A DNA stretch of 64,000 nucleotides from Lytechinus pictus (taxonomy: Eukaryota). The notes beneath the pieces are model-generated. The model had not been told where the DNA came from and ran no database searches. It was given only the letters and a program-made list of their open reading frames with translations. The DNA is taken from positions 26,474,001 to 26,538,000 of the forward strand of contig NC_087256.1 in the NCBI RefSeq assembly GCF_037042905.1, in the 5' to 3' direction. Positions 3 to 61,400 of this stretch are shown here, one piece after another. The first letter of the stretch is position 1. Every line of letters starts with the position of its first letter. The position numbers and the translations under genes were made by a program.

Positions 3-185
3 TAGCAAGACCATTTTACCTTTCATATGAGGGCACATACCGGAGAAAAGCCTCATGCTTGCACTTATTGTCAGAAGAGATTTAGTAAGAAGGCCCATCT
101 TACCCTCCATATAAGGACACATACCGGAGAAAAGCCTCATGCTTGCTCTCATTATGAGAAGAGATTTTCTGATAAAGTTCATTAA
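3..185 (+). CDS. 3' end of a C2H2 zinc-finger ORF entering from the left edge (partial)
   Basis: Frame +3 reads ...[57 protein letters not shown], with TGEKP linkers and TAA at 183-185. This could be the true stop or the first disablement. Confidence 0.5.
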
Positions 186-1410
186 CCTGTCATATAAGAA
201 CGCATACTGGAGAAAAACCTTATTCTTGCTCTTATTGTGAGAAAAGGTTTTCTAACAAGACCAATGTTATCTGCCATATAAAAACACATACTGGAGAAAA
301 GCCATATGCTTGCTCTCATTGTGAGAGGAGGTTTTCTACAAAAAGTGAGCTTACCCGTCATATAAGAAGACATACTGGAGAAAAGCCATATGCTTGCCCT
401 CATTGTGAAAAAAGATATTCTTACAGTACTTATCTAAAAGACCATTTAAGAACTCATTCTGGAGAAAAGCCTTATGCTTGCTCTCATTGTAAGAAGAGAT
501 TTTGTACAAAGACAGAGCTTACCCGTTATATACGAACACATACTGGAGAAAAGCCTTATGCTTGCTCTCATTGTGAGAAGAGACACTCTACAAAGGGTGA
601 TCTTGCCCGTCATATGACAACTCATACTGGAGAAAAGCCTTATGCTTGCTCTCATTGTGAGGAGTGGTTTCCTACAACGGGTGAATTAACCCGTCATGAA
701 ACAACACATATTGGAGAAAAGCCTTATTTTTGCTCTCTTTGCAAGAAGAGATTTTCTAAGAAGAGAAATCTTACCCTTCACATAGTAACACATACTAAAG
801 AAAAACCTTATGCATGCTCTCATTGTGAGAAGAGATTTTGTGACAAAGGCACCTTAACCCGTCATGTGACAACACATACTGGACAAAAGCCTCATGCATG
901 CTCTCGTTGTAAGAGGAGATTTTCTACAAAGAGAGAGCTCTCTTGTCATATGAGTACACATACTTGAGAAAAGCCTTATGTTTGCACTTATTGTCAGAAG
1001 AGATTCAGTAACAAGACCCATTTTACCTTTCATATAAGGACACATACCGGAGAAAAGCCTCATGCTTGTTCTCATTGTAAGAAGAGATTTTGTACAAAGA
1101 TTGAGCTTACCCATCACATACGAGCACATATTGGAGAAAAGCCTTATGCTTCCTCTCATTGTGAGAAGAGACATTCTACAAAGAGTAATCTTACCCGTCA
1201 TATGACAACTCGTATTGGAGAAAAGCCTTATGCTTGCTCTCATTGTGAGAAGAGGTTTTCTAGAAAGGTTGAACTTACTCGTCATGAAAGAACACATACT
1301 TGAGAAAAGCTTTGTTCTTTAAAATCTCATTACTAATTATGCTCATTGATTAAATAAAGCACATTAAATTAACCTGTCATGTAAAAATGCATGCTGGAGA
1401 AAAGTCCTAT
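186..1410 (+). pseudogene. Degenerate C2H2 zinc-finger array
   Basis: 84-bp periodic CxxC...HxxxH-TGEKP units interrupted by stops (e.g. TGA 965-967) and frameshifts. ORF 614-967 holds four intact fingers. Confidence 0.85.
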
Positions 1411-1424
1411 CAGGATTATGCTAT

Positions 1425-3620
1425 TGTGAGAAGATATTATCTTTCAAGGCCAATCTTACAGAACATTTAAGAATACTTAATGGAGTAAAGCCTGATGCTT
1501 GCACTCATTGTGAGAAGATATTATCTTACAAGGCCAATCTTACAGAACATTTAAGAATACTAAATGGAGTAAAGCCTGATGCTTGCACTCATTGTGAGAA
1601 GATATTATCTTACAAGGCCAATCTTACAGAACATTTAAGAATACTTAATGGAGTAAAGCCTGATGCTTGCTCTCATAGTGAGAAGATTTTATCTTACAAG
1701 GCCAATCTTACAGAACATTTAAGAATACTTAATGGAGTAAAGCCTGATGCTTGCACTCATAGTGAGAAGATATTATCTTTCAAGGCCAATCTTACAGAAC
1801 ATTTAAGAATACTTAATGGAGTAAAGCCTGATGCTTGCACTCATTGTGAGAAGATATTATCTTACAAGGCCAATCTTACAGAACATTTAAGAATACCTAA
1901 TGGAGTAAAGCCTGATGCTTGCTCTCATAGTGAGAAGATATTATCTTACAAGGCCAATCTTACAGAACATTTAAGAATACTTAATGGAGTAAAGCCTGAT
2001 GCTTGCTCTCATAGTGAGAAGATTTTATCTTACAAGGCCAATCTTACAGAACATTTAAGAATACTTAATGGAGTAAAGCCTGATGCTTGCACTCATAGTG
2101 AGAAGATATTATCTTTCAAGGCCAATCTTACAGAACATTCAAGAATACTTAATGGAGTAAAGCCTGATGCTTGCACTCATTGTGAGAAGATATTATCTTA
2201 CAAGGCCAATCTTACAGAACATTTAAGAATACCTAATGGAGTAAAGCCTGATGCTTGCTCTCATAGTGAGAAGATATTATCTTACAAGGCCAATCTTACA
2301 GAACATTTAAGAATACTTAATGGAGTAAAGCCTGATGCTTGCTCTCATAGTGAGAAGATTTTATCTTACAAGGCCAATCTTACAGAACATTTAAGAATAC
2401 TTAATGGAGTAAAGCCTGGTGCTTGCACTCATAGTGAGAAGATATTATCTTTCAAGGCCAATCTTACAGAACATTTAAGAATACTTAATGGAGTAAAGCC
2501 TGATGCTTGCACTCATTGTGAGAAGATATTATCTTACAAGGCCAATCTTACAGAACATTTAAGAATACTTAATGGAGTAAAGCCTGATGCTTGCTCTCAT
2601 AGTGAGAAGATTTTATCTTACAAGGCCAATCTTACAGAACATTTAAGAATACTTAATGGAGTAAAGCTTGGTGCTTGCTCTCATTGTGAGAAGATATTAT
2701 CTTTCAAGGCCAATCTTACAGAACATTTAAGAATACTTAATGGAGTAAAGCCTGATGCTTGCACTCATAGTGAGAAGATATTATCTTTCAAGGCCAATCT
2801 TACAGAACATTTAAGAATACTTAATGGAGTAAAGCCTGATGCTTGCACTCATTGTGAGAAGATATTATCTTAGAAGGCCAATCTTACAGAACATTTAAGA
2901 ATACTTAATGGAGTAAAGCCTGATGCTTGCACTCATAGTGAGAAGATATTATCTTTCAAGGCCCATCTTACAGAACATTTAAGAATACTTAATGGAGTAA
3001 AGCCTGATGCTTGCACCCATAGTGAGAAGATATTATCTTTCAAGGCCAATCTTACAGAACATTTAAGAATACTTAATGGAGTAAAGCCTGATGCTTGCAC
3101 TCATTGTGAGAAGATATTATCTTACAAGGCCAATCTTACAGAACATTTAAGAATACTTAATGGAGTAAAGCCTGATGCTTGCACCCATAGTGAGAAGATA
3201 TTATCTTTCAAGGCCAATCTTACAGAACATTTAAGAATACTTAATGGAGTAAAGCCTGATGCTTGCACTCATTGTGAGAAGATATTATCTTACAAGGCCA
3301 ATCTTACAGAACATTTAAGAATACTTAATGGAGTAAAGCTTGGTGCTTGCTCTCATTGTGAGAAGATATTATCTTTCAAGGCCAATCTTACAGAACATTT
3401 AAGAATACTTAATGGAGTAAAGCCTGATGCTTGCACTCATAGTGAGAAGATATTATCTTTCAAGGCCAATCTTACAGAACATTTAAGAATACTTAATGGA
3501 GTAAAGCCTGATGCTTGCACTCATAGTGAGAAGATATTATCTTACAAGGCCAATCTTACAGAACATTTAAGAATACTTAATGGAGTAAAGCTTGGTGCTT
3601 GCTCTCACTGTGAGAAGATA
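1425..3620 (+). repeat. 84-bp zinc-finger-derived minisatellite, about 26 near-identical copies
   Basis: Unit gatgcttgcactcattgtgagaagatattatcttacaaggccaatcttacagaacatttaagaatacttaatggagtaaagcct translates as DACTHCEKILSYKANLTEHLRILNGVKP. The second His is lost in all copies and the second Cys is often Ser. Confidence 0.95.
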
Positions 3621-4060
3621 TTTTCCCCAAAAGCCCATCTAATACTTCATACAAGAATACATACTGGAGAAAAAACCCTATATTTCCTCTCATTGTAAGA
3701 AGGCATTTTTTTCGATAGAGAACTCGCTTAACATTCTTATAAAAACTCATAATGGAGAAAAACTCTATCCTTTATTTGCTGTCATTGTGAGAAGAGATTT
3801 TCTCCCAAAAGAAATCTTTCGAAATTTATCACGACACCTGACTCTGGATTAAAAAAATATATGTTGATATTGTTAGAATGGGTTTCCCCAAAAGCTTTCA
3901 TTTTCTGATATGAACACATACATGAAAAATGGCTTCATTATTGCTATCCTTGTGAGAAGAGATTGTCTAAGAAGAGCAATATAAAGTGTCTTATTGCTCA
4001 AAAATCTAATATCAAATGCTAAAGTAAAATCCCATCCTTGTCCAAATTATGAGAAATTGT
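3621..4060 (+). pseudogene. Further decayed zinc-finger units
   Basis: catactggagaaaaa and cattgtgagaagagattt motifs with indels and stops. Confidence 0.7.
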
Positions 4061-31400: not shown

Positions 31401-34400
31401 TGTCATTTTATTTGATTCTGTAAAACTCATTTTGAAATTGTTACCATAATTGGCATTATGAACCCTTATCTTTCCTTTGGCAAGGTGTTAATCTACATGT
31501 TCATTTGCCACTCCCATTTATGTGTTGTCCAAGGATACCAGATGGAAAAGAATCACTTAACCCTAATTCTCCCGGGGGGGGGGGGGGCCATTATGGCCCC
31601 CCCCCGCTTGACAATTTTCGCGATATATCTGCTGCGCAAAATTTTTTGACCTCGCCGCTCACTGACTTTTTACTTTCAAGTCTCGCGCAAATTTTGAGAC
31701 CAAATTTGTGACGCCCGGGTACGCGGTTACGACATTACGCAACATTATGTAAGTGCATGTCAGACCCAAAATTGCTCATAAACGTGATTTCATGTACAAA
31801 TCCAATGCAAATTGTGTATTTGGCCAAAATTCATAAATGTATCATTATTTCTACTTTTAATGATTAAACTTAATTAATTTTGCCTTGTTTATGATCAGAA
31901 TTAAGTCTGGAACGATTTCCATCGAAAAAACAATAAAAAACAAAAAGTAAAAAAACAAAGAAATACATAAGAAATTTAAAAAACAATAAAATACATAAGA
32001 AATCGGTCTTGGTACCAGATTTTTTTTCATTCACAATTGTTAGGAATGCTATAAAGAATATTTTCACCAAAAAATAGCATTCTAGGAGCTTTATTTAGTG
32101 AATCAGAGCAAAAAGTATGATTTCATGAATAAATTAGCATAATTAATTCATATAAAATAAAAATATATGAATTCAGTGAAATTTAACAATGCAACTGCGT
32201 AGATTACGTCATTCTCTACCATCATGCAAATTTTTGTTGTGATCGCGCAATCCACGGCTGAGATCTTAAGGGGGGGCCATAATGGCCCCCCCCCCCCCCC
32301 CCCCCCGGGGAATGACAAGAAAGGAGAAAAATAAATGAAACAGAATGGTGAAAGTTTGAAAGAAATCGGACAAGCAGTAAGAAAGTTATTGCTGCTTTAA
32401 AATTGAGATCCCTATTACTATGTAGATTTCAAATTGGCAACTGGGTAAGTAAAATATGATAAGGGGCAAGGACACCTTTCCCATAGGCCATGAACTTAAT
32501 TATCGGGGATTTGTGGTTTTCTCCTAAGTACCCATTCCCCTGGGGCAGTAGGCCTAATCTATATAAAACCCAGGCAGTATTGTTTTATATCCTCATGAAA
32601 GAAAAATATATTTGGAAGTAAAACTTTTGAAAACAAAATGATGTTTTAGCCATTTTATGTATTGGAATAGATGGAAGAGTAGCCCTTGCCTTACATCGCT
32701 ATGACATCACATATACGGCCAATTTGAAGTCTCCATGGGTATAGTGATTATCCATATTTACAACTTTTAAAAATTCATATCTTTCTTATTGTTTGTCCGA
32801 TATTGTTCAAATTTTCACCTATCAACTTGTCTGATTTTTCCTTTTCCTCCAAAGACAAGTTTTTATTTGGGTAGGATTCCCCTTTAAAGGCTTGAGCACC
32901 TGATCCTGTTAGCCGTGCCATGCCATAGCCATAGTAATAATTTGCAGGTCTTAAGAATATTGTATTAATCAGATGAAAATTATCATTCATTTAATCTGAG
33001 TTTGACAAATTACGGATAAAAAATCTGCACTTAGTATTAATGAAAAATAAATAAAAAATAATATTTTGACGGGCACATCATCTTCTCCAGGTGGTAGAAC
33101 AGGGCCCCATCTTACAAAGAGTTGTGATTGATCCGATCAACCACGACTATGGATGGCCAGCAATGTCACGATCTAAAATGGAAATTTGTTCAAAATGTTT
33201 TTTAGATATCCATAGATATCCATCGTTCTCTTGCAAATTCAGTGTGCGTGCTGCTTTTTGTCTCGCCCACCAGAGGTGAAGGGGAAATTTAGGGATCCAA
33301 ATGTAGTCCGTCCGTCCGTCACAAATCTAATGACACATAACTCCACAACCGTAAGTTGCTTTTCAACCAAACTTGGACGGTAGATGGACCTGGGGGACCT
33401 GCATGTTATGCTGCAGTCGGAGGTCGCATGGTAAGGTCAAAGGTCATTTTCAGGTCAACGTTAAAGTTTACATGCAAGACTCTCTTATGACACCTAACTC
33501 CGCAACCGTAAGTCGCTTTTCAACCAAACTTGGATGGTAGATGGACTTGGGGGACCTGCATGTTACGCTGCAGTCGGAGGTCACATGATAAGGTCAAAGG
33601 GCATTTTCAGGTCAACGTTAAAGTTTACATGCAAGACTCTCTTATGACACCTAACTCCACAACCGTAAGTCGCTTTTCAACCAAACTTGGTTGGTAGATG
33701 AACTTGGGGGACCTGCATGTTATGCTGCAGTCGGAGGTCACATGATAAAGTAAAAGGTCATTTTTAGGTCAACGTTATTTACATGCAAGACTCTTATGAC
33801 ACCTAACTCTGCAACCGTAAGTCACTTTTCAACAAAACTTGGATGGTAGATGTACTTGGGCAACCTGCATGTTTTGCTGCAGTGGGAGGTCACATGGTAA
33901 TGTCAAAGGTCATTTTCAGGTCAACATTTAAGTTTACGTGCAAGGCTCTTATGACAAGTGTTATTCCATCCCAGTCATTTCACAATGAAGTTTCAATACA
34001 ATTCTGTTGCGTGCCCTCGCAAATCACGATATTTTCTGGTTATTTTCATAAGTGGGCGAGACACAAAATCACTTTTGCCTTGTTTATAAAGGACATTCAG
34101 GATTTTTTTTGTAGAAAAAATTATGACATTGATGGATTTTCTAACAGTTGAGGTTGATTGGATCAATGGTAACTCGTGGAAAGGGGGCCCTGGGCCCCGT
34201 TGTACAAAGAGTTACGATTGATCGGGTCAATCGTAACTCTATGGAAATCCATCAGTGTCAATTTTTCTACAGGAAATTTGCAAAATGTCCTTTGTGATCA
34301 AAGGAGAACACTCCAAATTGTCAAGAAATCATTGAATTTATGGATATGGATATGGATTCATAATCTAGAACTTTTTTTTTCCATAGTTGCGATTGATTGG

Positions 34401-49400: not shown

Positions 49401-52400
49401 CCTTTTATATAAATAATTTTATTATCAGGTTTGGATTCTCCTTGTAACATCATACAAAATGATTGTAATCTGGCAAATTAGTCGCTACCATTTTGGTATT
49501 ATATGTAGGCCTGTGATAATTGTTTTGAAAATGAATATTAAGAAAAAAAAATGATGCTGTGCTGGAGAAATGAATCATTTAATCGCAAGTGAAATATGTG
49601 TTGCAAATTTATTAATCTTTCAATCTTATAAAAGTTTTGTAATATGTTTTGAAAAGAAAGAGTAAAATCATGCCACAAAACACTGAAAATTGCTTTATTT
49701 TCTGTGAAACAGTTTTATGCATGTCTTCATGTAGTATTGAGCAAGCTGATGATGTCATATTCCCTTTTTATATTCTTTTGTATTTAATCATATTAATTTA
49801 AGTTTGTCCACAAAGAATAAAAATAAAATGGATTATCAACTGATACAATGCATAAGATAATCATATTTGCAATCAATGCTGTTACAAGGAAGTCATATCG
49901 TACAAACATATATATAACGATATCAACTAATTATGATTTCATGTAATAAAAGGAAAGCAGGGACATGACATCGTCAGCCTACCTAATGAATATTCATGAC
50001 AGCGTGCATTTTCACAAAATATTATTTAAATCTTAATAACTTTGTTATTTCTCATTAGATTTTGATGAAATTTTCAGTATTTTGCTCATTGAATCTTGCT
50101 CAGTATATATAGGTTTAAATATATCATCCCGGAGTAGCCGTTTAATGTCATTATTCATTCCTATTTGTGTGATTGTTACTAGGTTCTCCCCGGTATAACC
50201 AGCGAGGATGCATCTGTCCGTAACATGGCTGTGAAGTGCCTTGGTCTAGGTGCCCAGATCAGCAGGGTTTTCGCTATGCAGCAACTCCTCCTCCTCATGC
50301 AGGTAGGGAACCATTCAAACCAGCTCAATCAGGATCCGGTTTCATAAAGACTTCTTACAATAACAAATGCATCATTTCTATAAACAGTTCACTATCAGCC
50401 AATCAGATTGAAGGATTTCAGTAGCTTTTAACTGTTATTGCAAATTTGTTATTTTAACAAGTTTTATGAAGTGGACCCCTAGTCTGACGGATTGTTTTGA
50501 CGTGAGCGAATATTCAATTCATTTACCTGTATGAAGTGCATGACCCCATTGAGCCCAGATAAGTGTTATTTAAAAAAAATCACCTTCAATGAATTTTAAA
50601 AGAAACAGCTTCAAACATTCTTAAAATGTGCAAGTGAATTTGATGGCCAGATGCCCCCTCCTCCCATAATAGAATGCTTAATGGTAGATAAGGGTGTCAC
50701 AGAACCATTTCATGAAAGCTACTATACATTCAAAAATATTTTAATCATTCACTCCACTTGTTCTATATATATCTCTGAATATGATTATATGCCACAAGCC
50801 TACAAATTTAACAAAGCATTCACTCCAATTTCTAGAAAGAATTTGACTCCTTTGTTCATGTCGGGGGTTGGACATCTGATCTGTGAAATCCCAGCTCTCC
50901 AAGCAATATTTGACAATGTCATGTTGTTCTACCTCAAAATTACCCAAGCAGATTAAGAAACAGTTCGCCTCACCCCCCCCAAAAAAAAAAAAAAACAATA
51001 ACTAACCAACTAGTGATTAATAATTGGGACTGATTTCTATGATTAATTCAATTGATTATTGTTTATGATCAGTTGTAAAAAGCAGCCCCATGATTAATCA
51101 CTTAGCGTCATGTTACAGGGGCCCAGGTGATTGCTCTCCACTTGCTTGCTTGACACTTATCCCTACATCTTTTTGCTTCTAATCTTCAAGATATTCCAAG
51201 AAGATTGGGGGACAGTCCAGGTGACTGCTCTCGAACAATTTTTTTTACTATAACCCTTAGGCCCGTATTCTGAAGTCAGGTTTAACTTAGACCATGGTCT
51301 AACTCTGCAAAGATTATGGGAAGCCAAAAGTGTCAAAATTTTTATTAAGTTGTATGTTTCTTATGTTTACTGTGCTCTTTCCTGATTCATTGATGATGAA
51401 GACAATCATCTATTTATACTTCCTAGACAATTATGAATGATTTGAGAGCCAAATGAGCTGAAATGTGATATCTCTGCCGTTAGTGATTTATGTAACAATT
51501 GGCTATCCATACTTAAACCACAACTTTAAACTTGAGTTTAAGTTTAACCCAACTTCAGAGTATGGGCCTATAAGTTTTCTTTTATTTTGTTTAATCTTCC
51601 AGATATCCCAGGTACATGTAGATTAGGAAACTGTCCAGATGAGAGTTCTCCAAGCAATCTTTGACTATGATCTCTTTGTTTTTGTTTTTAAAACTTCAAG
51701 ATATCCCAGGTAGATCAAGAAACAGTCCAGGTAACAGCTCTCCAAGCGATCTTTGACATCGCCCAGACCTACGGCCTTGACATCTTCACATTGCCAGAGA
51801 CAAGCTCCGAGAAACATGAGGAAGGGAAGGACAATGAAGAGGAAGAGGAGGAGGAAGAAGAAGGGGAAGGTAAAACTAAAGACAAGGAGCAGTCTGCCCA
51901 GAGTGCAGCCAACAGCGCCCTCTCCATTCTTACCAAGTTATTGGATTCGGAGGTATGAATGTTGACAATCTTCCACAGGAAGCTTATCAACCGCATCAAT
52001 TTTGAAGCGTTTTTCAGTTGTTTTTTTCTCACATTGCTCCCAAATATCTACTTGTCTACATGTACCTTCAGCACTATACATGTAGAAACACGTATGTAGA
52101 AAGATCCAAGTGTATTTTGATGGATTCGTCAAGTGAATTGTTTTCAACTTGTATTAGATGTACGTTCCCTGCTTCCTGTGAGAAATACATGTACAAGACA
52201 ATGTCTTCCCATTTGGAAGGTGGTCATGGCAAACGTTTTTTTTTTTTTAAGAGTCAAGTCACTCGTTTATACAGTATGTGATATTGCAACATTAGCAATC
52301 GCGGAAATGGTCTACGGTACACCATGTGTAAAGTCCTGGAAGGACTGAGATAAAAGTGGATAGAGATAGAAGTGAAATGGACAGGCGAGAAAGTGGAGGT

Positions 52401-55400
52401 TGAGAAGATAAGTATTCTTTTCGGAATGACTGTAGTCCTTAACAGGACTGTAAACCAGGGGAGAGGAAAGCTGAGTAGTAGGCAGGGTGAGAGGCTTGAG
52501 TAGGAGGCTGGTTGGGTTGGAGAGGTAAGAGAGGCTTGAGTAGATGACAGAAGGCTGGCTTACGTCGGCGAATGGAGCTGTGGAGTAGGATAGAAGACTC
52601 AACATTTCGGGCTGGTTGACTGTCAAGACTAGTTAGATAAATTTCAAATTTGATCCTTCTTCTATAACTACTAAGGTAAACAAAATAGTAACATTAGCAT
52701 GTTTTCACTCAGCGACTTGGGCGTAGGGCAAGTCCTTATATTATTATTCCTATTTTCTAAATCAAGAAATACAATTATGGATTAAAGAATTCTTTTTCTT
52801 GATATGGAAAATGTTTTTTTTATGAAGAATTTACATTTGTTGTATTCTTAACATCAAACATTCAATTCTTGATTTAAAACATATCTCAAATTGTATTTCT
52901 TGCCATATACCCGCGTCGCTGAAAGCCCCATACGTCGCTTAGTGAAAACCGGCTATTACTTATGTAGACATGAAATTCTGTATACAACAAGTAGGTACAT
53001 TATGATGAAAAGTGTCATACACAGGTGGATGTGATGTTTCAAACATTTATTATATTTTTTTTTAAATTAAACAATAGTACAGTGAGTGTCATTTCCCAAA
53101 ATATCATCATCAACCTGTACTAATCGCACAGAAACATTGTTAGCGCTGACAATTCGCTAACAGAGGCCCTGTTACAACCGGTAATGTGGCAGCGATGCCT
53201 AATGTTACAATGCATCTCTTACACATTGAAATCGCCCCTAGCCCAAGCAATCTTCTCCCAGTTTGACTCTGCATTAGTGAGGAGTATGACTTTTGCAAAT
53301 CGACCTGTACATAATTTTGTACCTTCACATTGTTTCAAAACAGAGCAATGAGCTGCGCACCGTGTCTGCCGAAGGCCTGGCCAAGCTGCTTCTCTCTGGA
53401 CGCATCACCAGCCCCAAGCTGCTCTCCCGTCTCCTGCTACTCTGGTACAACCCGACCACCGAGGAAGATCAGCATCTCAGGTCCTGCCTGGGTGCTTTCT
53501 TCCCGATATACTCGTTTGCAGGAAGGTAAGAATCGTAATAAGGACACGCAAATCTTGTTTAGCGCCTGTCACATGATATAACATCTCTATATGCTTCCAA
53601 AGGACTTGAAGATTATTACCCTAGTAACAAAGAATAAGAAATTTTGATTGAGGAATATTCCTTTAGGGATGAGGACTAATGGATGAGTACATCACTCAGT
53701 AGAAGAAGCATTGCAGTGTCTGGAGGCATTGTTCCTTGCACAATCATTTGCTGAAAAGTAGGAATAATAACAAATAAAGGAGAAATAGGAACTTTAAATA
53801 AGATGGGGATTGATTTGGGATTTGATGATTTTGATCAAATGAGTAATAAAAATAGGGGTTTGATCAAATGCAAATTTGAACATTTGAGTGCAAGCAAATA
53901 CTAGCAGTAGCATCTTGTTTGTCCGGGGGGGGGGGGGGATTTGTTATTATTCGCATGAATTTGCTGGAAAGTAGGAATAAAAAGAAATATGTACTTTGAA
54001 ATAAGGAGTTAAAATATCTGATGTTGTTCTAATGTTAATAGGTAATTATGCTAACCCTAAAGACATTCTTCAATGTTCCAACTATCTCCCCTCTTAATTA
54101 TTAGTCGATTATCTTGTTTTTCTCCATTTCAGGGTCCACCAGGAGTGTTCGGAGGAGACTTTCCTGCTAACCCTAAAGACACTCTTCAATGTTCCAACTA
54201 TCTCCTCTCTTTCTTCATTATTAGTTGATTATCTTGTTTTTCTCCATTTCAGGGTTCACCAGGAGTGTTCGGAGGAGACTTTCCTGCTAACCCTAAAGAC
54301 ACTCTTCAATGTTCCAACTATCTCCTCTCTTTCTTCATTATTAGTTGATTATCTTGTTTTTCTCCATTTCAGGGTTCACCAGGAGTGTTCGGAGGAGACT
54401 TTCCTGCTAACTCTAAAGACACTCATCAATGTTCCAACTATCTCCCCTCGTTCTTCATTATTAGTTGATTATCTTGTTTTTCTCCATTTCAGGGTCCACC
54501 AGGAGTGTTCGGAGGAGACTTTCCTGCTAACCCTAAAGACACTCTTCAATGTTCCAACTATCTCCCCTCTTAATTATTAGTCGATTATCTTGTTTTTCTC
54601 CATTTCAGGGTCCACCAGGAGTGTTCGGAGGAGACTTTCCTGCTAACCCTAAAGACACTCTTCAATGTTCCAACTATCTCCTCTCTTTCTTCATTATTAG
54701 TTGATTATCTTGTTTTTCTCCATTTCAGGGTTCACCAGGAGTGTTCGGAGGAGACTTTCCTGCTAACCCTAAAGACACTCTTCAATGTTCCAACTATCTC
54801 CTCTCTTTCTTCATTATTAGTTGATTATCTTGTTTTTCTCCATTTCAGGGTTCACCAGGAGTGTTCGGAGGAGACTTTCCTGCTAACTCTAAAGACACTC
54901 ATCAATGTTCCAACTATCTCCCCTCGTTCTTCATTATTAGTTGATTATCTTGTTTTTCTCCATTTCAGGGTCCACCAGGAGTGTTCGGAGGAGACTTTCC
55001 TGCTAACCCTAAAGACACTCTTCAATGTTCCAACTATCTCCTCTCTTTCTTCATTATTAGTTGATTATCTTGTTTTTCTCCATTTCAGGGTTCACCAGGA
55101 GTGTTCGGAGGAGACTTTCCTGCTAACTCTAAAGACACTCATCAATGTTCCAACTATCTCCCCTCGTTCTTCATTATTAGTTGATTATCTTGTTTTTCTC
55201 CATTTCAGGGTCCACCAGGAGTGTTCGGAGGAGACTTTCCTGCTAACCCTAAAGACACTCATCAATGTTCCAACTATCTCCCCTCGTTCTTCATTATTAG
55301 TTGATTATCTTGTTTTTCTCCATTTCAGGGTCCACCAGGAGTGTTCGGAGGAGACATTCCTGCTAACCCTAAAGACACTCATCAATGTTCCAACTATCTC

Positions 55401-58400
55401 CCCTCTTTCTTCATTATTAGTCGATTATCTTGTTTTTCTCCATTTCAGGGTCCACCAGGAGTGTTGGGAGGAGACTTTCCTGCTGACCCTAAAGACACTC
55501 ATCAATGTTCCAACTATCTCCCCTCTTTCTTCATTATTAGTTGATTATCTTGTTTTTCTCCATCTCAGGGTCCACCAGGAGTGTTCGGAGGAGACTTTCC
55601 TGCTAACCCTAAAGACACTCTTCAATGTTCCAACTACCTCCTCTCTTTCTTCATTATTAGTTGATTATCTTGTTTTTCTCCATTTCAGGGTTCACCAGGA
55701 GTGTTCGGAGGAGACTTTCCTGCTGACTCTAAAGACACTCATCAATGTTCCAACTATCTCCCCTCTTTCTTCATTATTAGTTGATTATCTTGTTTTTCTC
55801 CATTTCAGGGTTCACCAGGAGTGTTCGGAGGAGACTTTCCTGCTAACCCTAAAGACACTCATCAATGTTCCAACTATCTCCTCTCTTTCTTCATTATTAG
55901 TTGATTATCTTGTTTTTCTCCATTTCAGGGTTCACCAGGAGTGTTCGGAGGAGACTTTCCTGCTGACTCTAAAGACACTCATCAATGTTCCAACTATCTC
56001 CCCTCTTTCTTCATTATTAGTTGATTATCTTGTTTTTCTCCATCTCAGGGTCCACCAGGAGTGTTCGGAGGAGACTTTCCTGCTAACCCTAAAGACACTC
56101 TTCAATGTTCCAACTATCTCCCCTCTTTCTTCATTATTAGTTGATTATCTTGTTTTTTCTCCATCTCAGGGTTCACCAGGAGTGTTGGGAGGAGGCTTTC
56201 CTGCTAACCCTAAAGACACTCATCAATGCTCCAACTATCTCCCCTCTTTCTTTATTATTAGTTGATTATCTTGTTTTTCTCCATCTCAGGGTCCACCAGG
56301 AGTGTTCGGAGGAGACTTTCCTGCTAACCCTAAAGACACTCTTCAATGTTCCAACTATCTCCCCTCTTTCTTCATTATTAGTTGATTATCTTGTTTTTTC
56401 TCCATCTCAGGGTTCACCAGGAGTGTTGGGAGGAGGCTTTCCTGCTAACCCTAAAGACACTCATCAATGCTCCAACTATCTCCCCTCTTTCTTTATTATT
56501 AGTTGATTATCTTGTTTTTCTCCATCTCAGGGTCCACCAGGAGTGTTGGGAGGAGGCTTTCCTGCTAACCCTAAAGACACTCTTCAATGTTCCAACTATC
56601 TCCTCTCTTTCTTCATTATGAGTTGATTATCTTGTCTTCTCCATCTCAGGGTCCACCAGGAGTGTTGGGAGGAGGCTTTCTTGCTAACCCTAAAGACACT
56701 CAATGCTCCAACTATCTCCTCTCTTTCTTCAGTATTAGTTGATTATCTTGTTTTTCTTCATATCAGGGTCCACCAGGGGTGTTGGGAGGAGGCTTTCCTG
56801 CTAACCCTAAAGACACTCTTCAATGTTCCAACTATCTCCTCTCTTTCTTCATTATGAGTTGATTATCTTGTCTTCTCCATCTCAGGGTCCACCAGGAGTG
56901 TTGGGAGGAGGCTTTCTTGCTAACCCTAAAGACACTCAATGCTCCAACTATCTCCTCTCTTTCTTCAGTATTAGTTGATTATCTTGTTTTTCTTCATATC
57001 AGGGTCCACCAGGAGTGTTGGGAGGAGGCTTTCCTGCTGACCCTGAAGACACTCTTCAATGCTCCAATCACCTCACCCCTGGCAGAGATCAACCCCAGCA
57101 ATGTAGCGGAGTTCATGGTTCACCTCACGGATCACACTATGCTCAACGATAAACAGGCCTCAGATATACAGGTAAACATAATATTGATAATATATAGCAC
57201 TGAAGCAGAAGAAGAAGGAAACGGAGGAGGAGAGGAGGAAGAATCGACCTTGTTAGGTGCTCAAGGCGCTCCTTTAAAACCCCGGCTAAGCTAGGAATTT
57301 CTTCCTGCCGGTACCCATTCATGTCACAAGGGTTGAGTGCAGCACGTGGTTGCGGATTAATTTCTTCCTGAAAGAAATTACGCCTCTGGCAGTCTGGCTG
57401 GGATTTGAATCCACAATCCTCTGTTTAAAAATCTAAACAGACAGACCCATCTTTAGGGCCCCATTTCATAAAAAGTTGCTATGATAGCAAGTCTTGCTGG
57501 AATGTCAACTTCCATGACAACAGTGAAAATTCTACTTTGTGATTGGCTCTTCCATTGAAAGATGATGTTCTAAGATAGCAACTTTTTATGAAATGGGGCC
57601 CTGGCCCTTACACTTTTCTATTTGGGTTTATTCATGCTTTGTATCGTTTGGCACTTGAAGCACTTTAATATTTTCTAGCTTCTTATCTGGACCAGGAAGT
57701 AAATCTTACTGGCATCCCTGTATGTCTTCTAATAATGATAATGACAATGTGTGACATTCATATCACGCGTTATCATGCTATCACCCCGACTTGTCAATTG
57801 CTGGAGTATTTAAGGAATTCCTTCCTGCTGGGTACCCATTTACTAACCTTGGTTGAGAGTAGCAAATAGATAAATGCCTTTCCAAATGATGCAAGTGTCG
57901 TGATTGGATCTGAACCCTGGATCTTATGATTCAAAGTCGAGACTTGTCCAGTGAGCCATGACGCCTCCACTTCTCTATTTATTTATTTATTCAGGAGACA
58001 ACTGTCCATGACAATCTAGCCTTGAAGCTCTGTAATGCCATCCTGAAGGACCCTGCTGCCCCAGGAACCAGGGTCTTGTCTAAGACACTGACCATGCTGA
58101 CTATCAACATACACAACAAGGTTCACCTAGCGGACATCAAGGTCCTAGCTGATATGCTTCTTGACGTAAGTAGAAGGATCTTTCATAACAATACCTCTTA
58201 ACTTAGATGGATGGGCAGTTCCATGAAATATTCAACATTTTCCATTCTTACTTCACTACATGAAGAGCTCAAGTCAGCATGCTATAAAACCAATGCCTTT
58301 CAATTGAACTATAAAAAAAGGACCAATCACTTCAGGAAGGTAATTTTTTTATTTATCATAGGTTAAGTTGGCACATAAAATGAAGAACTAATTAGGGATA

Positions 58401-61400
58401 AATAGGGGCATTTAGCAGAATGGTAAATTATTATGTTCGAACAAAAAGTTGGTTTGTATAGTTTCAGATGAGGTTTGTATCTTAGCTCAACAGGGGTGCT
58501 TTTCAGAAAGAGTATACAAAACTTATAATGAAGATGTGGAAGTTATAGGTTTTGAAAAAAAATACAAATTGGCACAAAAGGGCGCTTTTACTGTAAGCAG
58601 AAAGTGCATTGTTGAAAACCGGGGCTTCCCAGAATTTGAATTTGGCACTGTGTGATAGACAAAGGGCTATTGCAAGCACTTAAAAGTAATAGAATCCGGT
58701 GGTGTTGAAGAAAGGTAATTAACAATTTTCAAAAATTGAAATGATACTTATTTATACAAAATGTGCTTATTGTTTTATTCTGGAATACAACTTGGATATT
58801 GAACTTGTCATCTTGAATAAATGTGTCGGAAAAAAAACTCTTTGTTTACAGCATGTTGATGAGAAAGTTGCCCTGCGCCAAGTGGAGAAGTTCTCCGACA
58901 ACATCGACAGCTTGTTGGGTGTGGAGAATGAGGATGGGGGAGAAAAGACAGAGGATAGAACAGCTGCTGAAGGGGCAGACAAGTTGGAAAAGGAACATGA
59001 GGCTGGAGAGAAGAATGATGGAATGGTAGGTGGTTACATAAATTACACAAGTTTTGTATTTAGGGTCATGAAGACAATGTTGGAAGAGCCACTGACTACA
59101 ATTTTTAGTCTAGAACACTTGTGTAAATTCAAGCAGCAAACCTATTATTCAGGTGGGAGGGGGGGGGGGGATGAACCATTGTTCCACCTCCCCCCCCCCC
59201 CCCCCACTTGAATAGTATGAAGTCATGTATTTACTCCCATGGTCTAAAAATCATTCAATATGAGTTTAGAGACTCTTTTTTTAGATAAGATGAGGTTTCC
59301 ACCACTGTCACATTTCTAAAGTAAAGCTTTTTTTTAGGTGCACTCAATTTTGAAAAGAATATTTAGATACAAATTTTTAACACACTAATGATTTATACAT
59401 GTACACATTGCAATTATAAGTAATGAGTGGTGGATGACAGGGAATGTAGTCAAGGCCGGCATTCAGGCCACATTTTGCCAGCCTTTTGTCAACATTTGCC
59501 GGCCTTTTGTTGGAAGTACCGACCTGGATTGCATCCCTTGTAGACGATCAGTCATACTTGATCAATTGACAGCTGTCATCTACATCTTACATTGGTTTGT
59601 TGATTATTTATATCCTTTTCTCCAGATGAACGAGACGGCTCGTAGTGTTGCCGCAGCTCAAGAGCTTTCTGAGGATTGCAAGAAGGAGCTCGCTGCACAA
59701 GAACTGACGGGCAAGAAGAAGACCAGGGCCAGAGGTTAGTTGGAATATAAATCAACATCGTTGAAGGGGATGGACAAAGTGTCCACGGTGAGCTGGATGA
59801 ACGGGCTATCTTTCCTCAACTTCACTTTGGAAAGATAGCGTTTACATCCATCTCACAGAGATCAGGAGGTGATAAGGTGCTTTATATTCCACATCTGAAA
59901 CGATGTTGAATTTAATTGAATTTATTACCAAATCTCACTGTCAGGTACAATTACATGGAATAGTACATCACATATGAACAAAACATTTGGTAATTGGAGC
60001 TAACATAATAGCAAGACGCTAATCGAGGTTAGCCCCAAATAATGTCATTATCATAGTTTTAATCATTTTAAATAAATCACAATATCGTACATAAAATTCA
60101 GTACTAATTCTACTTATTACTGATGCAGATGATTGTGGTCATTTTTAGTGAACATATTTACAAAAAAAAATATCTTAAATATTCACAAAAATCTTTATAC
60201 AGAAATTATTTGTTTTCAGGCAGTATATACCATACCAAATTAAATCTTCCAGTAGCACGAAAAAGAAGAGAATTTTGTTATAAAGAATGAAAAATATTAA
60301 CATGATAACCCACTGGGCATTTTACCCGATATTACCCGGGTTGTAACAGGTAATAACGTAGTTATTACCACGGTAACACCAGTGGGTAGTAACGGGGAAA
60401 TAGTAGACCAATCTTTCCCCGTTATTACCCGGACCCGATATTACTCCATTTACCCAATATTACCCAGTATGATGTAACCGATATTTCCAGCATTTTAATG
60501 ATATCACCACCTCATATTACTCTGTTTACCCAATATTACCCAATTAATGTCGGCTCATTAAAAAAACAATTAGTGTCATTAGGGTCATTGAAGCACATTT
60601 TTACAATTCCATACTCTAAGCCATATCATCTTATCCTATCCTAAAATCCTACATCCTAATCCTAATCCTATCCTACACCTATCCACCAAACCCTGTCATT
60701 TACTTCTATATATTGAGCGAGTTTACAACACTTGACAAATTATGGTTAACAATTATTCAACCCTAAAACATTTTTCTAAAATTAATGTCATGATTATGAC
60801 TAATATGATATATAAACTACACATTTTTCTGAAAATTTTCTGGGTGGAATAATTGCATAAACATAAACACATTAATTATTACAGCTATATTAGCTAAAAT
60901 TTTGGCCATTTATTGTAGTAATGAATATTCATGAGTAACTAATATTCCCAGCATTTTCCTGATATTACCATCTGATATTACTCCATTTACCCAATATTAA
61001 TGGGTTCCGCATGGGTTGGAGGTCTCGTTTCCATCTGAGTCCTATCTGGGCACCATGTGGGTTCAAGTATATGTTTTCATCTGGGTTCCATGTGGGCCCA
61101 TATGGGACCCAGATATCCCAGATAAGAACCGTATGTGATCACTTTGCTGTCTGGGAATGGAAGCGTTTCAACATTACCCATTACCCCTTATCAACCTGTT
61201 TGTAACTGGGTAAAATGTTGGTTTCATCAGGGTGATAACAGTAATTTTTTGGACTTTGAAAATTTCGCTGGGATTGCTGTAAGATTGCTCTTATATTACT
61301 AAAGTTTGCAATGTTATAACCAATCAAAGTCATTCAACATTACCCTTATTACCCCTCATCACCCTGTTGTAACTAGGTAAATGTAGGTTTCATCAGGGTG

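What the first reader, a model, noticed from the sequence alone, without database searches (positions are those of the whole stretch)
54049..57171. Array of 24 duplicate splice acceptors in front of an essential condensin exon
Seen: each ~120-bp unit is the intron end (pyrimidine tract plus CAG) and the first ~75 nt of NCAPG exon 15. AG positions: 54131, 54251, 54371, 54491, 54607 to 56047 every 120 nt, 56168, 56288, 56409, 56529, 56648, 56765, 56884, and the true one at 57001. None of the duplicates carries the exon donor. The spliceosome must therefore pass 24 near-identical acceptors, many with a pyrimidine tract at least as good (catttcag vs catatcag). Established: exon definition pairs an acceptor with a nearby donor, which would favour the last copy. 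Inference: this is a natural test of exon definition, and array length could tune CAP-G dose through unproductive splicing and NMD.
Basis: partly seen in the sequence, partly recalled or inferred. Interest (0 to 1): 0.85.

Follow-up and report, generated by a model that had tools for sequence, protein, structure and literature searches.

The report
Silent splice-acceptor minisatellite ("mirage") in NCAPG
A 120-base piece straddling an intron/exon border of the condensin gene NCAPG has been copied 24 times in tandem, putting 24 look-alike splice acceptors in front of the real one. RNA data show only the real, last acceptor in use, so this is a large example of a known, tolerated repeat type ("mirage"), not a demonstrated control device.

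Summary
Window 54049-57067 is a 120-bp tandem array of 25.3 copies at 94% match. Each unit holds about 42 nt of intron end (branch-site-like motif, pyrimidine tract, CAG) plus about 78 nt of the start of an NCAPG exon. There are 24 decoy acceptors and no usable donor inside the array.

RNA from four public runs shows one junction only, donor 53525 to the true acceptor (exon starts 57003). It has 17 + 32 reads plus assembled transcripts, and read depth over the array is near zero.

Decoy 23 is identical to the true acceptor from -223 to +11, so the choice must be made by sequence downstream of the acceptor. That fits exon definition.

23 of the 24 decoys would give a premature stop. Decoy 24 would give an NMD-immune in-frame +39 aa isoform, and it is not seen either. 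Dose tuning by unproductive splicing is therefore unsupported, though NMD-masked low-level use is not excluded.

The kind is already known: "mirages" in amphioxus genes, and the mirror-image human F7 intron-7 VNTR. This scan has noted the same kind at other loci of this genome (cubilin, SLC4, an ABC transporter). A decayed second one lies before another exon of this same gene.

Verdict: a new, unusually large member of a known kind, of modest interest.

The parts
53344..53525 (+). Upstream NCAPG exon ('exon 14'); its donor is AAG|GTAAGA at 53525/53526.
   Evidence: RNA contigs and reads cover 53342-53523 and join to 57001. Boundaries were read. The translation matches human CAP-G.
53526..54048 (+). 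Unique 5' part of the intron. Without the array the intron would be about 565 nt instead of 3477 nt.
   Evidence: RNA depth here is zero.
54049..57002 (+). Mirage array: one partial unit plus 24 units of about 120 bp, ending with the true acceptor's own intron end. It carries 24 decoy acceptors (G of AG at 54132 to 56885). The + strand is 63% pyrimidine.
54067..55041 (+). Recent 4-unit higher-order duplication: 499 nt exactly repeated at offset 476 (54067-54565 = 54543-55041).
   Evidence: Identical unit pairs u1=u5, u2=u6, u3=u7=u9.
56543..57013 (+). Terminal 2-unit duplication: 235 nt exact at offset 236 (56543-56777 = 56779-57013). Decoy 23 therefore equals the true acceptor from -223 to +11.
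56886..57002 (+). Last unit. Use of decoy 24 (AG at 56884-56885) would add 117 nt, an in-frame stop-free 39 aa. It is the only decoy without a premature stop.
   Evidence: No reads lie here.
57003..57171 (+). True NCAPG exon ('exon 15'), 169 nt, donor CAG|GTAAAC. About the first 78 nt are the source of the exon-derived half of the repeat unit.
   Evidence: The joint 53523->57001 (GT..AG, cut +2) has 17 + 32 reads and 606-nt contigs in X25 and X3. Conserved with the human protein.
57995..58165 (+). Next NCAPG exon ('exon 16'), joined to 57171 in the same RNA contigs.
50893..51700 (+). Older, decayed copies of acceptor plus exon start in front of another NCAPG exon (51701-51952). Not part of the array, but the same kind of event in the same gene.
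   Evidence: 51581-51669 is 79-88% identical to the true border at 51679-51761; 51170-51247 is 65-74%; a fragment lies at 50893-50964.

Best explanation
This is an intronic minisatellite of the 'mirage' type.

Origin. A 120-bp segment spanning the last ~42 nt of an NCAPG intron and the first ~78 nt of the following exon was duplicated in tandem. It was then amplified by unequal exchange or replication slippage, lately in blocks of 2 and 4 units. The intron grew from about 0.57 kb to 3.5 kb.

Why it is tolerated. The spliceosome pairs the upstream donor (53525) only with the exon-proximal acceptor, so every upstream copy is removed as intron. Most likely this is because only that acceptor is followed by the rest of the exon and, 169 nt on, by a real donor. 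The 24 decoys are complete acceptors but lack an exon body and a donor, so they are not committed. This is exon definition, possibly helped by enhancers in the non-duplicated 3' half of the exon.

Shown: the array, its unit anatomy, its block structure, and the exclusive junction in steady-state RNA.
Inferred: the mechanism of choice, the mode of expansion, and selective neutrality.
For: - Array and anatomy.
- The exon half is the ancestral part. It encodes residues conserved with human CAP-G, VHQECWEEAFLLTLKTLFNAP against TNQECFEEAFLPTLQTLANAP.
- RNA: a single joint skips 3477 nt with GT..AG ends. It has 17 reads (X21) and 32 reads (X22), starting at 13 and 25 different places. 606-nt contigs in X25 and X3 join 53342-53523 / 57001-57172 / 57997-58161. 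Array depth is 0-0.5 against 16-34 in the exons.
- The unit-to-unit junction exists in an independent sample: a 181-nt X25 contig spans 1.5 units.
- Decoys are intact and at least as pyrimidine-rich as the true site, and there is no donor in the array.
- Decoy 23 is identical to the true site from -223 to +11, so discrimination must be downstream.
- No sign of selection for coding. 7 of 24 units carry frame-breaking indels. A stop-free 40-codon unit is expected by chance in 69% of shuffles.
- Turnover typical of minisatellites: identical unit pairs and exact blocks of 499, 294 and 235 nt.
[quoted passage not shown] In the human F7 IVS7 VNTR only the exon-proximal of 5-9 identical donors is used (PMC1557585).
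Against: - The RNA was not NMD-inhibited. With 49 junction reads, and a reporting threshold of 3 reads per joint, low-level decoy use could be missed: roughly up to 3% of steady-state mRNA, and more before decay.
- The RNA comes from other individuals ('organism B'). Their reads are mostly 95-99% identical to the window. Their array length is unknown, and only 1.5 units plus a few reads show that they carry array sequence.
- Tissues and stages of the runs are unknown.
- Copy number rests on the assembly. The exact 499-nt block could be an assembly stutter.
- Exon definition by size alone does not exclude decoy 24, which would make a 286-nt exon. The precise discriminating element is therefore not identified.
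Confidence: 0.8

Rival explanations
1. A fraction of transcripts splice to decoys, acquire premature stops and are degraded by NMD. Array length then sets CAP-G dose.
For: 23 of 24 decoys would give a premature stop. The decoys are intact and strong on paper. NMD was not blocked in the RNA data, so some use could be hidden.
Against: No decoy junction was reported and depth is near zero in the array. Any decoy isoform would have to include the last 334 nt of the array, and depth there is zero. The NMD-immune in-frame decoy 24 is also unused. The same repeat type is splicing-silent in amphioxus genes and, as a donor array, in human F7. Similar arrays sit in unrelated genes of this genome, which argues for a mutational by-product.
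Confidence: 0.07
2. Assembly artefact: the array, or much of its length, does not exist in the animal.
For: There was no spanning-read check. Exact blocks of 499 nt and 294 nt could be assembler stutter. The amphioxus globin paper reports a mis-assembled mirage in a draft genome.
Against: The units differ in a structured way, with several subtypes, indel variants and a gradient toward the exon. An independent run holds a contig crossing the exon-part/intron-part junction, which exists only if the duplication is real. A few sense-strand RNA reads map inside the array.
Confidence: 0.04
3. Raw material for a new exon or isoform. Decoy 24, or open runs of units 5-17, are used in some tissue or stage to insert 39 aa or multiples of 40 aa into CAP-G. 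Alternatively, the array is on its way to creating a new intron, as in the Ebner model.
For: The unit is 40 stop-free codons in the NCAPG frame. Decoy 24 gives an intact +39 aa reading frame. An intron-gain model from mirages has been proposed (PMC3087553).
Against: No such junction or coverage appears in four runs. Stop-freeness is expected by chance, 0.69. Indel units break the frame. The insertion would fall inside a conserved HEAT-repeat stretch.
Confidence: 0.04
4. The array works at the DNA or chromatin level, for example as an intronic enhancer, a pyrimidine-rich H-DNA element or a replication element, and the splice signals are incidental.
For: There is strong strand asymmetry: 63% pyrimidine on the + strand, with GC skew -0.24 and AT skew -0.26.
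Against: Nothing else points to it. There is no known RNA family, no antisense transcription and no flanking inverted repeats. The asymmetry is simply inherited from the pyrimidine tract.
Confidence: 0.03

Closest known systems
[quoted passage not shown] Sources: Ebner et al. 2010, PMC3087553; Pavelitz et al. 2013, PMC3902484; original Canestro et al. 2002, not held in the library.
   Same: The tandem unit spans a splice junction, here the 3' end of an intron plus the 5' part of an exon, exactly as in BflGb6. The authentic copy sits at the edge of the array. Most copies keep the AG signal. Regular splicing is not disturbed. Repeat turnover shows identical neighbouring blocks.
   Different: The taxon differs: earlier notes of this scan call the genome the painted sea urchin, which was not tested here. 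The scale differs: 24 extra copies over 3 kb, against 3-6 units of 150-160 bp in BflGb6 and units of 10-72 bp in Adh3. The host is an essential cell-cycle gene. Length polymorphism and somatic instability, shown for Adh3, were not tested here.
Human F7 intron 7 37-bp VNTR, whose first unit spans the exon 7/IVS7 border (Borensztajn et al. 2006, PMC1557585).
   Same: A natural array of splice sites identical to the authentic one. Only the exon-proximal site is used. Reading-frame preservation does not rescue the pseudo-sites: in-frame pseudo-sites are also unused there, like decoy 24 here.
   Different: It is the mirror image: 5-9 donors downstream of the true donor, against 24 acceptors upstream of the true acceptor. 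In F7 the pseudo-sites were shown by mutagenesis to be functional, and a 5'-to-3' scanning model was proposed. Nothing of that sort has been tested here, and such scanning would not by itself explain choice of the last acceptor.
Intron gain or extension by tandem genomic duplication (Rogers model; Gao and Lynch 2009; Hellsten et al. 2011; as reviewed in PMC3443670).
   Same: An internal tandem duplication is rendered harmless because duplicated splice signals let the extra copy be spliced out.
   Different: No new intron is created here. An existing intron is lengthened sixfold, and the duplication is iterated into a minisatellite.
Regulated unproductive splicing (poison exons or alternative sites coupled to NMD).
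   Same: Use of 23 of the 24 decoys would introduce a premature stop.
   Different: No alternative junction was detected, there is no evidence of conservation or regulation, and the NMD-immune decoy is unused as well.

Membership tests
Mirage minisatellite (tandem duplication of an intron-exon boundary) | Head-to-tail repeat with a minisatellite-size unit | tested here: met
   Period 120, 25.3 copies, 94% match.
Mirage minisatellite (tandem duplication of an intron-exon boundary) | The unit contains the host gene's own splice junction (intron end plus exon start) | tested here: met
   Alignment of 25 acceptor-centred units to the true border. The exon half encodes conserved CAP-G residues.
Mirage minisatellite (tandem duplication of an intron-exon boundary) | The authentic copy at the array edge is the one in the mRNA, and regular splicing is not disturbed | tested here: met
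   Single joint 53525->57003, 49 reads plus contigs; array depth about 0.
Mirage minisatellite (tandem duplication of an intron-exon boundary) | Repeat turnover or concerted evolution within the cluster | tested here: met
   Identical unit pairs and exact blocks of 499, 294 and 235 nt at offsets of 4, 2 and 2 units.
Mirage minisatellite (tandem duplication of an intron-exon boundary) | Length polymorphism between haplotypes or individuals | tested here: inconclusive
   The X25 contig combines unit subtypes in an order not present in the window. The two parts overlap by only 35 nt, so a k=31 assembly chimera is possible.
F7-type VNTR of splice-site pseudo-sites | [quoted passage not shown] | tested here: met
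   Decoy 23 equals the true acceptor from -223 to +11. The others differ by 1-2 nt in the last 20 nt.
F7-type VNTR of splice-site pseudo-sites | Only the exon-proximal site is used | tested here: met
F7-type VNTR of splice-site pseudo-sites | Pseudo-sites are functional when the authentic site is inactivated | not testable with these tools
   Needs minigene mutagenesis.
NMD-coupled regulated unproductive splicing | A detectable alternative junction leading to a premature stop | tested here: not met
   Premature stops are predicted for 23 of 24 decoys, but no decoy junction reached the reporting threshold, with min_share set to 1%.
NMD-coupled regulated unproductive splicing | The alternative isoform rises under NMD inhibition, and the output responds to a signal or to array length | not testable with these tools
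   No NMD-inhibited or genotyped RNA data were available.
Recursive splice sites | The acceptor is immediately followed by a regenerated donor (AG|GTRAGT) | tested here: not met
   All copies read CAG|GGT[CT]CAC, and no acceptable donor is regenerated with the upstream exon end AAG.
NAGNAG or other tandem acceptors | Competing AGs a few nucleotides apart that share one branch site and tract | tested here: not met
   Spacing is 116-121 nt, and each copy has its own branch-like motif and tract.

The most novel reading that the evidence does not exclude
Splice-junction minisatellites are a recurrent, genome-wide class in this echinoderm, as in amphioxus. They arise preferentially at 3' splice sites because the pyrimidine tract promotes slippage or fork stalling. 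The NCAPG array, through low-level NMD-masked decoy use or delayed acceptor commitment, makes CAP-G output depend on a hypervariable copy number.
Probability: 0.07. Interest if true: 0.65.

Novelty: new member of a known kind. Interest (0 to 1): 0.33.

Why it matters
The array is probably neutral for the animal. It is still a very clean natural substrate for asking how a 3' splice site is chosen. There are 24 intact competitors, transcribed earlier than the true site. One of them is identical to the true site over 223 nt upstream, and another would give an in-frame, NMD-immune product. All are ignored. That argues against 'first come, first served' and against upstream-context models, and for definition of the acceptor from the exon side. 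It is the mirror of the human F7 donor array.

Together with other loci noted by this scan and a decayed second case in the same gene, it suggests that 'mirages' are not an amphioxus peculiarity. They may be a general route of intron growth in highly polymorphic marine deuterostomes.

Tried and rejected
- Known RNA families. The Rfam scan of 53000-58500 at E <= 0.1 gave one chance-level hit, 22 bits against a gathering score of 86.
- Flanking inverted repeats that could loop out the array: none relevant.
- Recursive splicing and NAGNAG readings, rejected from the sequence.
- Selection for an open reading frame in the unit. The stop-free frame is expected in 69% of shuffles, and 7 units carry frame-breaking indels.
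- A purine-rich enhancer unique to the true exon. The window has CTGAAGAC where the decoys have CTAAAGAC. All X21 and X22 reads carry A at 57045, as the decoys do, and are still spliced correctly.
- tRNA-derived origin of the highly expressed repeat in the next intron: no tRNA found.
- Literature searches for natural arrays of duplicated 3' splice sites outside amphioxus found nothing further. Gao and Lynch 2009, Kuhne et al. 1983 and Canestro et al. 2002 are not held in the library.
- The organism was not determined independently. 'Painted sea urchin' comes only from earlier notes of the scan.
Full report
**1. The observation**

Tandem Repeats Finder reports a single array at 54049-57067: period 120, 25.3 copies, 94% matches, score 5229. 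Reading the sequence and indexing the motif CAGGGT[CT]CACCAGG gives 25 occurrences. Seventeen of the 24 AG-to-AG units are exactly 120 nt; the others are 116, 121, 121, 119, 117, 119 and 117 nt.

The flanking exons are 53344-53525 and 57003-57171. Their joined translation matches human condensin subunit CAP-G (PDB 6igx_B, residues 664-753, E = 3.5e-32), so the gene call is right. The exon number could not be checked.

Each unit consists of two parts:
- about 42 nt of intron end, with a branch-like yTnAy motif at about -25 and/or -36, a pyrimidine tract and CAG;
- about 78 nt homologous to the start of the true exon.

The exon half encodes residues conserved with the human protein, so the exon is the source and the array is derived from it.

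The tracts are 88% pyrimidine in 23 decoys and 82% in decoy 23, against 82% for the true site. No GT in the array resembles a donor: the best scores 2.5 bits, against 7.3 and 10.2 bits for the two real donors.

**2. What decoy use would do**

I translated from the upstream exon through each possible acceptor to the true donor.
- The 120-nt unit is 40 stop-free codons in the NCAPG frame.
- Because of the indel units, 23 of 24 decoys run into a premature stop.
- Only decoy 24 (AG at 56884-56885) gives an intact product, with 39 extra residues.
- The stop-free unit is not evidence of selection. 69% of shuffles of the intron-derived part stay stop-free, and 7 units carry frame-breaking indels.

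**3. RNA evidence**

Two searches for public runs gave RNA runs of 'organism B'. I laid window 53250-58250 against two ribo-depleted raw-read runs (X21, X22) and two contig sets (X25, X3), listing differences from 1%.

- Only one joint was reported. It runs 53523->57001, which is 53525->57003 after the stated +2 shift. It skips 3477 nt with GT..AG ends.
- It has 17 reads in X21, starting at 13 different places, and 32 reads in X22, starting at 25 places.
- 606-nt contigs in X25 and X3 join 53342-53523, 57001-57172 and 57997-58161.
- Depth is 16-34 in the exons and 0-0.5 across the array. It is exactly 0 over 56590-56923 in both raw runs.
- Any isoform starting at any decoy would have to contain that last stretch. 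Decoy-derived mRNA is therefore below roughly 3% of steady state.
- The in-frame decoy-24 isoform cannot be hidden by NMD, and it is not seen either.

Limits of this evidence:
- There was no NMD block.
- Tissues are unknown.
- Joints need at least 3 reads to be listed.
- The individuals differ from the window; most reads are 95-99% identical.

**4. Is the array real?**

Three things argue for a real array:
- The units fall into structured subtypes with indel variants.
- A 181-nt contig in run X25 crosses the exon-part/intron-part junction, which exists only after duplication.
- A few sense-strand reads map inside the array.

The unit order in that contig differs from the window. The two halves overlap by only 35 nt, so this is not safe evidence of polymorphism. 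Copy number remains an assembly statement.

**5. Dynamics**

Acceptor-centred units are pairwise identical for u1=u5, u2=u6, u3=u7=u9, u14=u16, u18=u20 and u22=u24. Exact repeats occur as follows:
- 499 nt at offset 476;
- 294 nt at offset 241;
- 288 nt at offset 240;
- 235 nt at offset 236.

These show recent duplications of 4-unit and 2-unit blocks, the usual minisatellite turnover.

The 235-nt block is 56543-56777 = 56779-57013. It makes decoy 23 identical to the true acceptor from -223 to +11. Nothing upstream of the AG can therefore explain why the true site is chosen. The information must lie downstream, in the rest of the exon and its donor 169 nt away.

Without the array the intron would be about 565 nt. 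The neighbouring introns are 825 and 1388 nt.

**6. Mechanism**

The best reading is a tolerated by-product of repeat expansion. The duplicates are removed as part of the intron because only the exon-proximal acceptor can be defined together with a donor across a normal-sized exon.

This agrees with exon definition as discussed in PMC1557585. It argues against a first-come-first-served choice, because the decoys are transcribed first.

Size alone does not exclude decoy 24, whose exon would be 286 nt. Enhancers in the non-duplicated 3' half of the exon, or simple proximity to the donor, must therefore contribute. This step is inferred, not shown.

One candidate discriminator failed. The window has CTGAAGAC where the decoys have CTAAAGAC, but all X21 and X22 reads carry the decoy-like A at 57045 and are spliced normally.

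**7. What is known**

- Ebner et al. [quoted passage not shown] - The same paper cites earlier cases in Adh3, where the term was coined and somatic instability was shown, and at other loci. [quoted passage not shown]
- Pavelitz et al. 2013 (PMC3902484) add PGBD5 and TnC.
- The human F7 intron-7 VNTR is the mirror case. It has 5-9 identical donors of which only the exon-proximal one is used, even where a pseudo-site would preserve the frame (PMC1557585).
- Searches for natural 3' splice-site arrays outside amphioxus found nothing more.

The present array meets the defining features of a mirage that could be tested. What is new is the host taxon and gene, and the scale: 24 decoys over 3 kb.

**8. 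Recurrence**

A decayed set of acceptor-plus-exon-start copies precedes another exon of the same gene:
- 51581-51669, 79-88% identical to the true border at 51679-51761;
- 51170-51247, 65-74% identical;
- a fragment at 50893-50964.

Earlier notes of this scan report the same kind of array in cubilin, SLC4 and an ABC-transporter gene of this genome. I did not test those notes. This favours a mutational process that acts genome-wide over a device specific to NCAPG.

**9. Verdict**

Dose tuning by NMD is unsupported. The array is a new, unusually large member of a known kind, and its interest is modest.

Noticed in passing
window 50893-51700: Decayed copies of the acceptor plus exon start lie in front of another NCAPG exon (51701-51952). 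This is a second, older mirage in the same gene.
   Followed up: partly
window 16-3709: An 84-bp tandem array of 43.8 copies. Its consensus reads as C2H2 zinc-finger units (...TGEKPYACSHCEKRF...). It is presumably an ordinary zinc-finger gene at the window edge.
   Followed up: no
window 57243-57533: A stretch in the intron after the true exon has very high depth in the RNA contig sets (about 1000-2400) and many loose ends at 57243 and 57273. It looks like a high-copy, expressed dispersed repeat. It has no tRNA and no Rfam match.
   Followed up: partly
window 53364-53493, 57015-57148, 58030-58165: Polymorphism in the exons is very heavy. There are 8 heterozygous sites in one 182-nt exon. The last 4 nt of the exon ending at 58165 read TGAC in the window and AGAT in many reads; both encode Leu-Asp. 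This fits a highly heterozygous marine invertebrate.
   Followed up: no
window 57045 and 57068: At these two sites of the true exon the RNA reads carry the base found in the array units (A and C), not the window's base (G and T). 57045 is variant in all X21 and X22 reads; 57068 is variant in all four runs. The decoys therefore preserve an allele state of the exon that is present in other individuals.
   Followed up: no
window 54049-57002, each unit about +34 to +40 of the exon-derived part: Where the true exon has TGCTGAC, most units have TGCTAAC, a perfect branch-site consensus about 85 nt upstream of the next decoy AG. It may be coincidental.
   Followed up: no
window 33326-33956: Another minisatellite: period 157, 4.1 copies, 90% match. 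It also appears as a 309-bp dimer.
   Followed up: no
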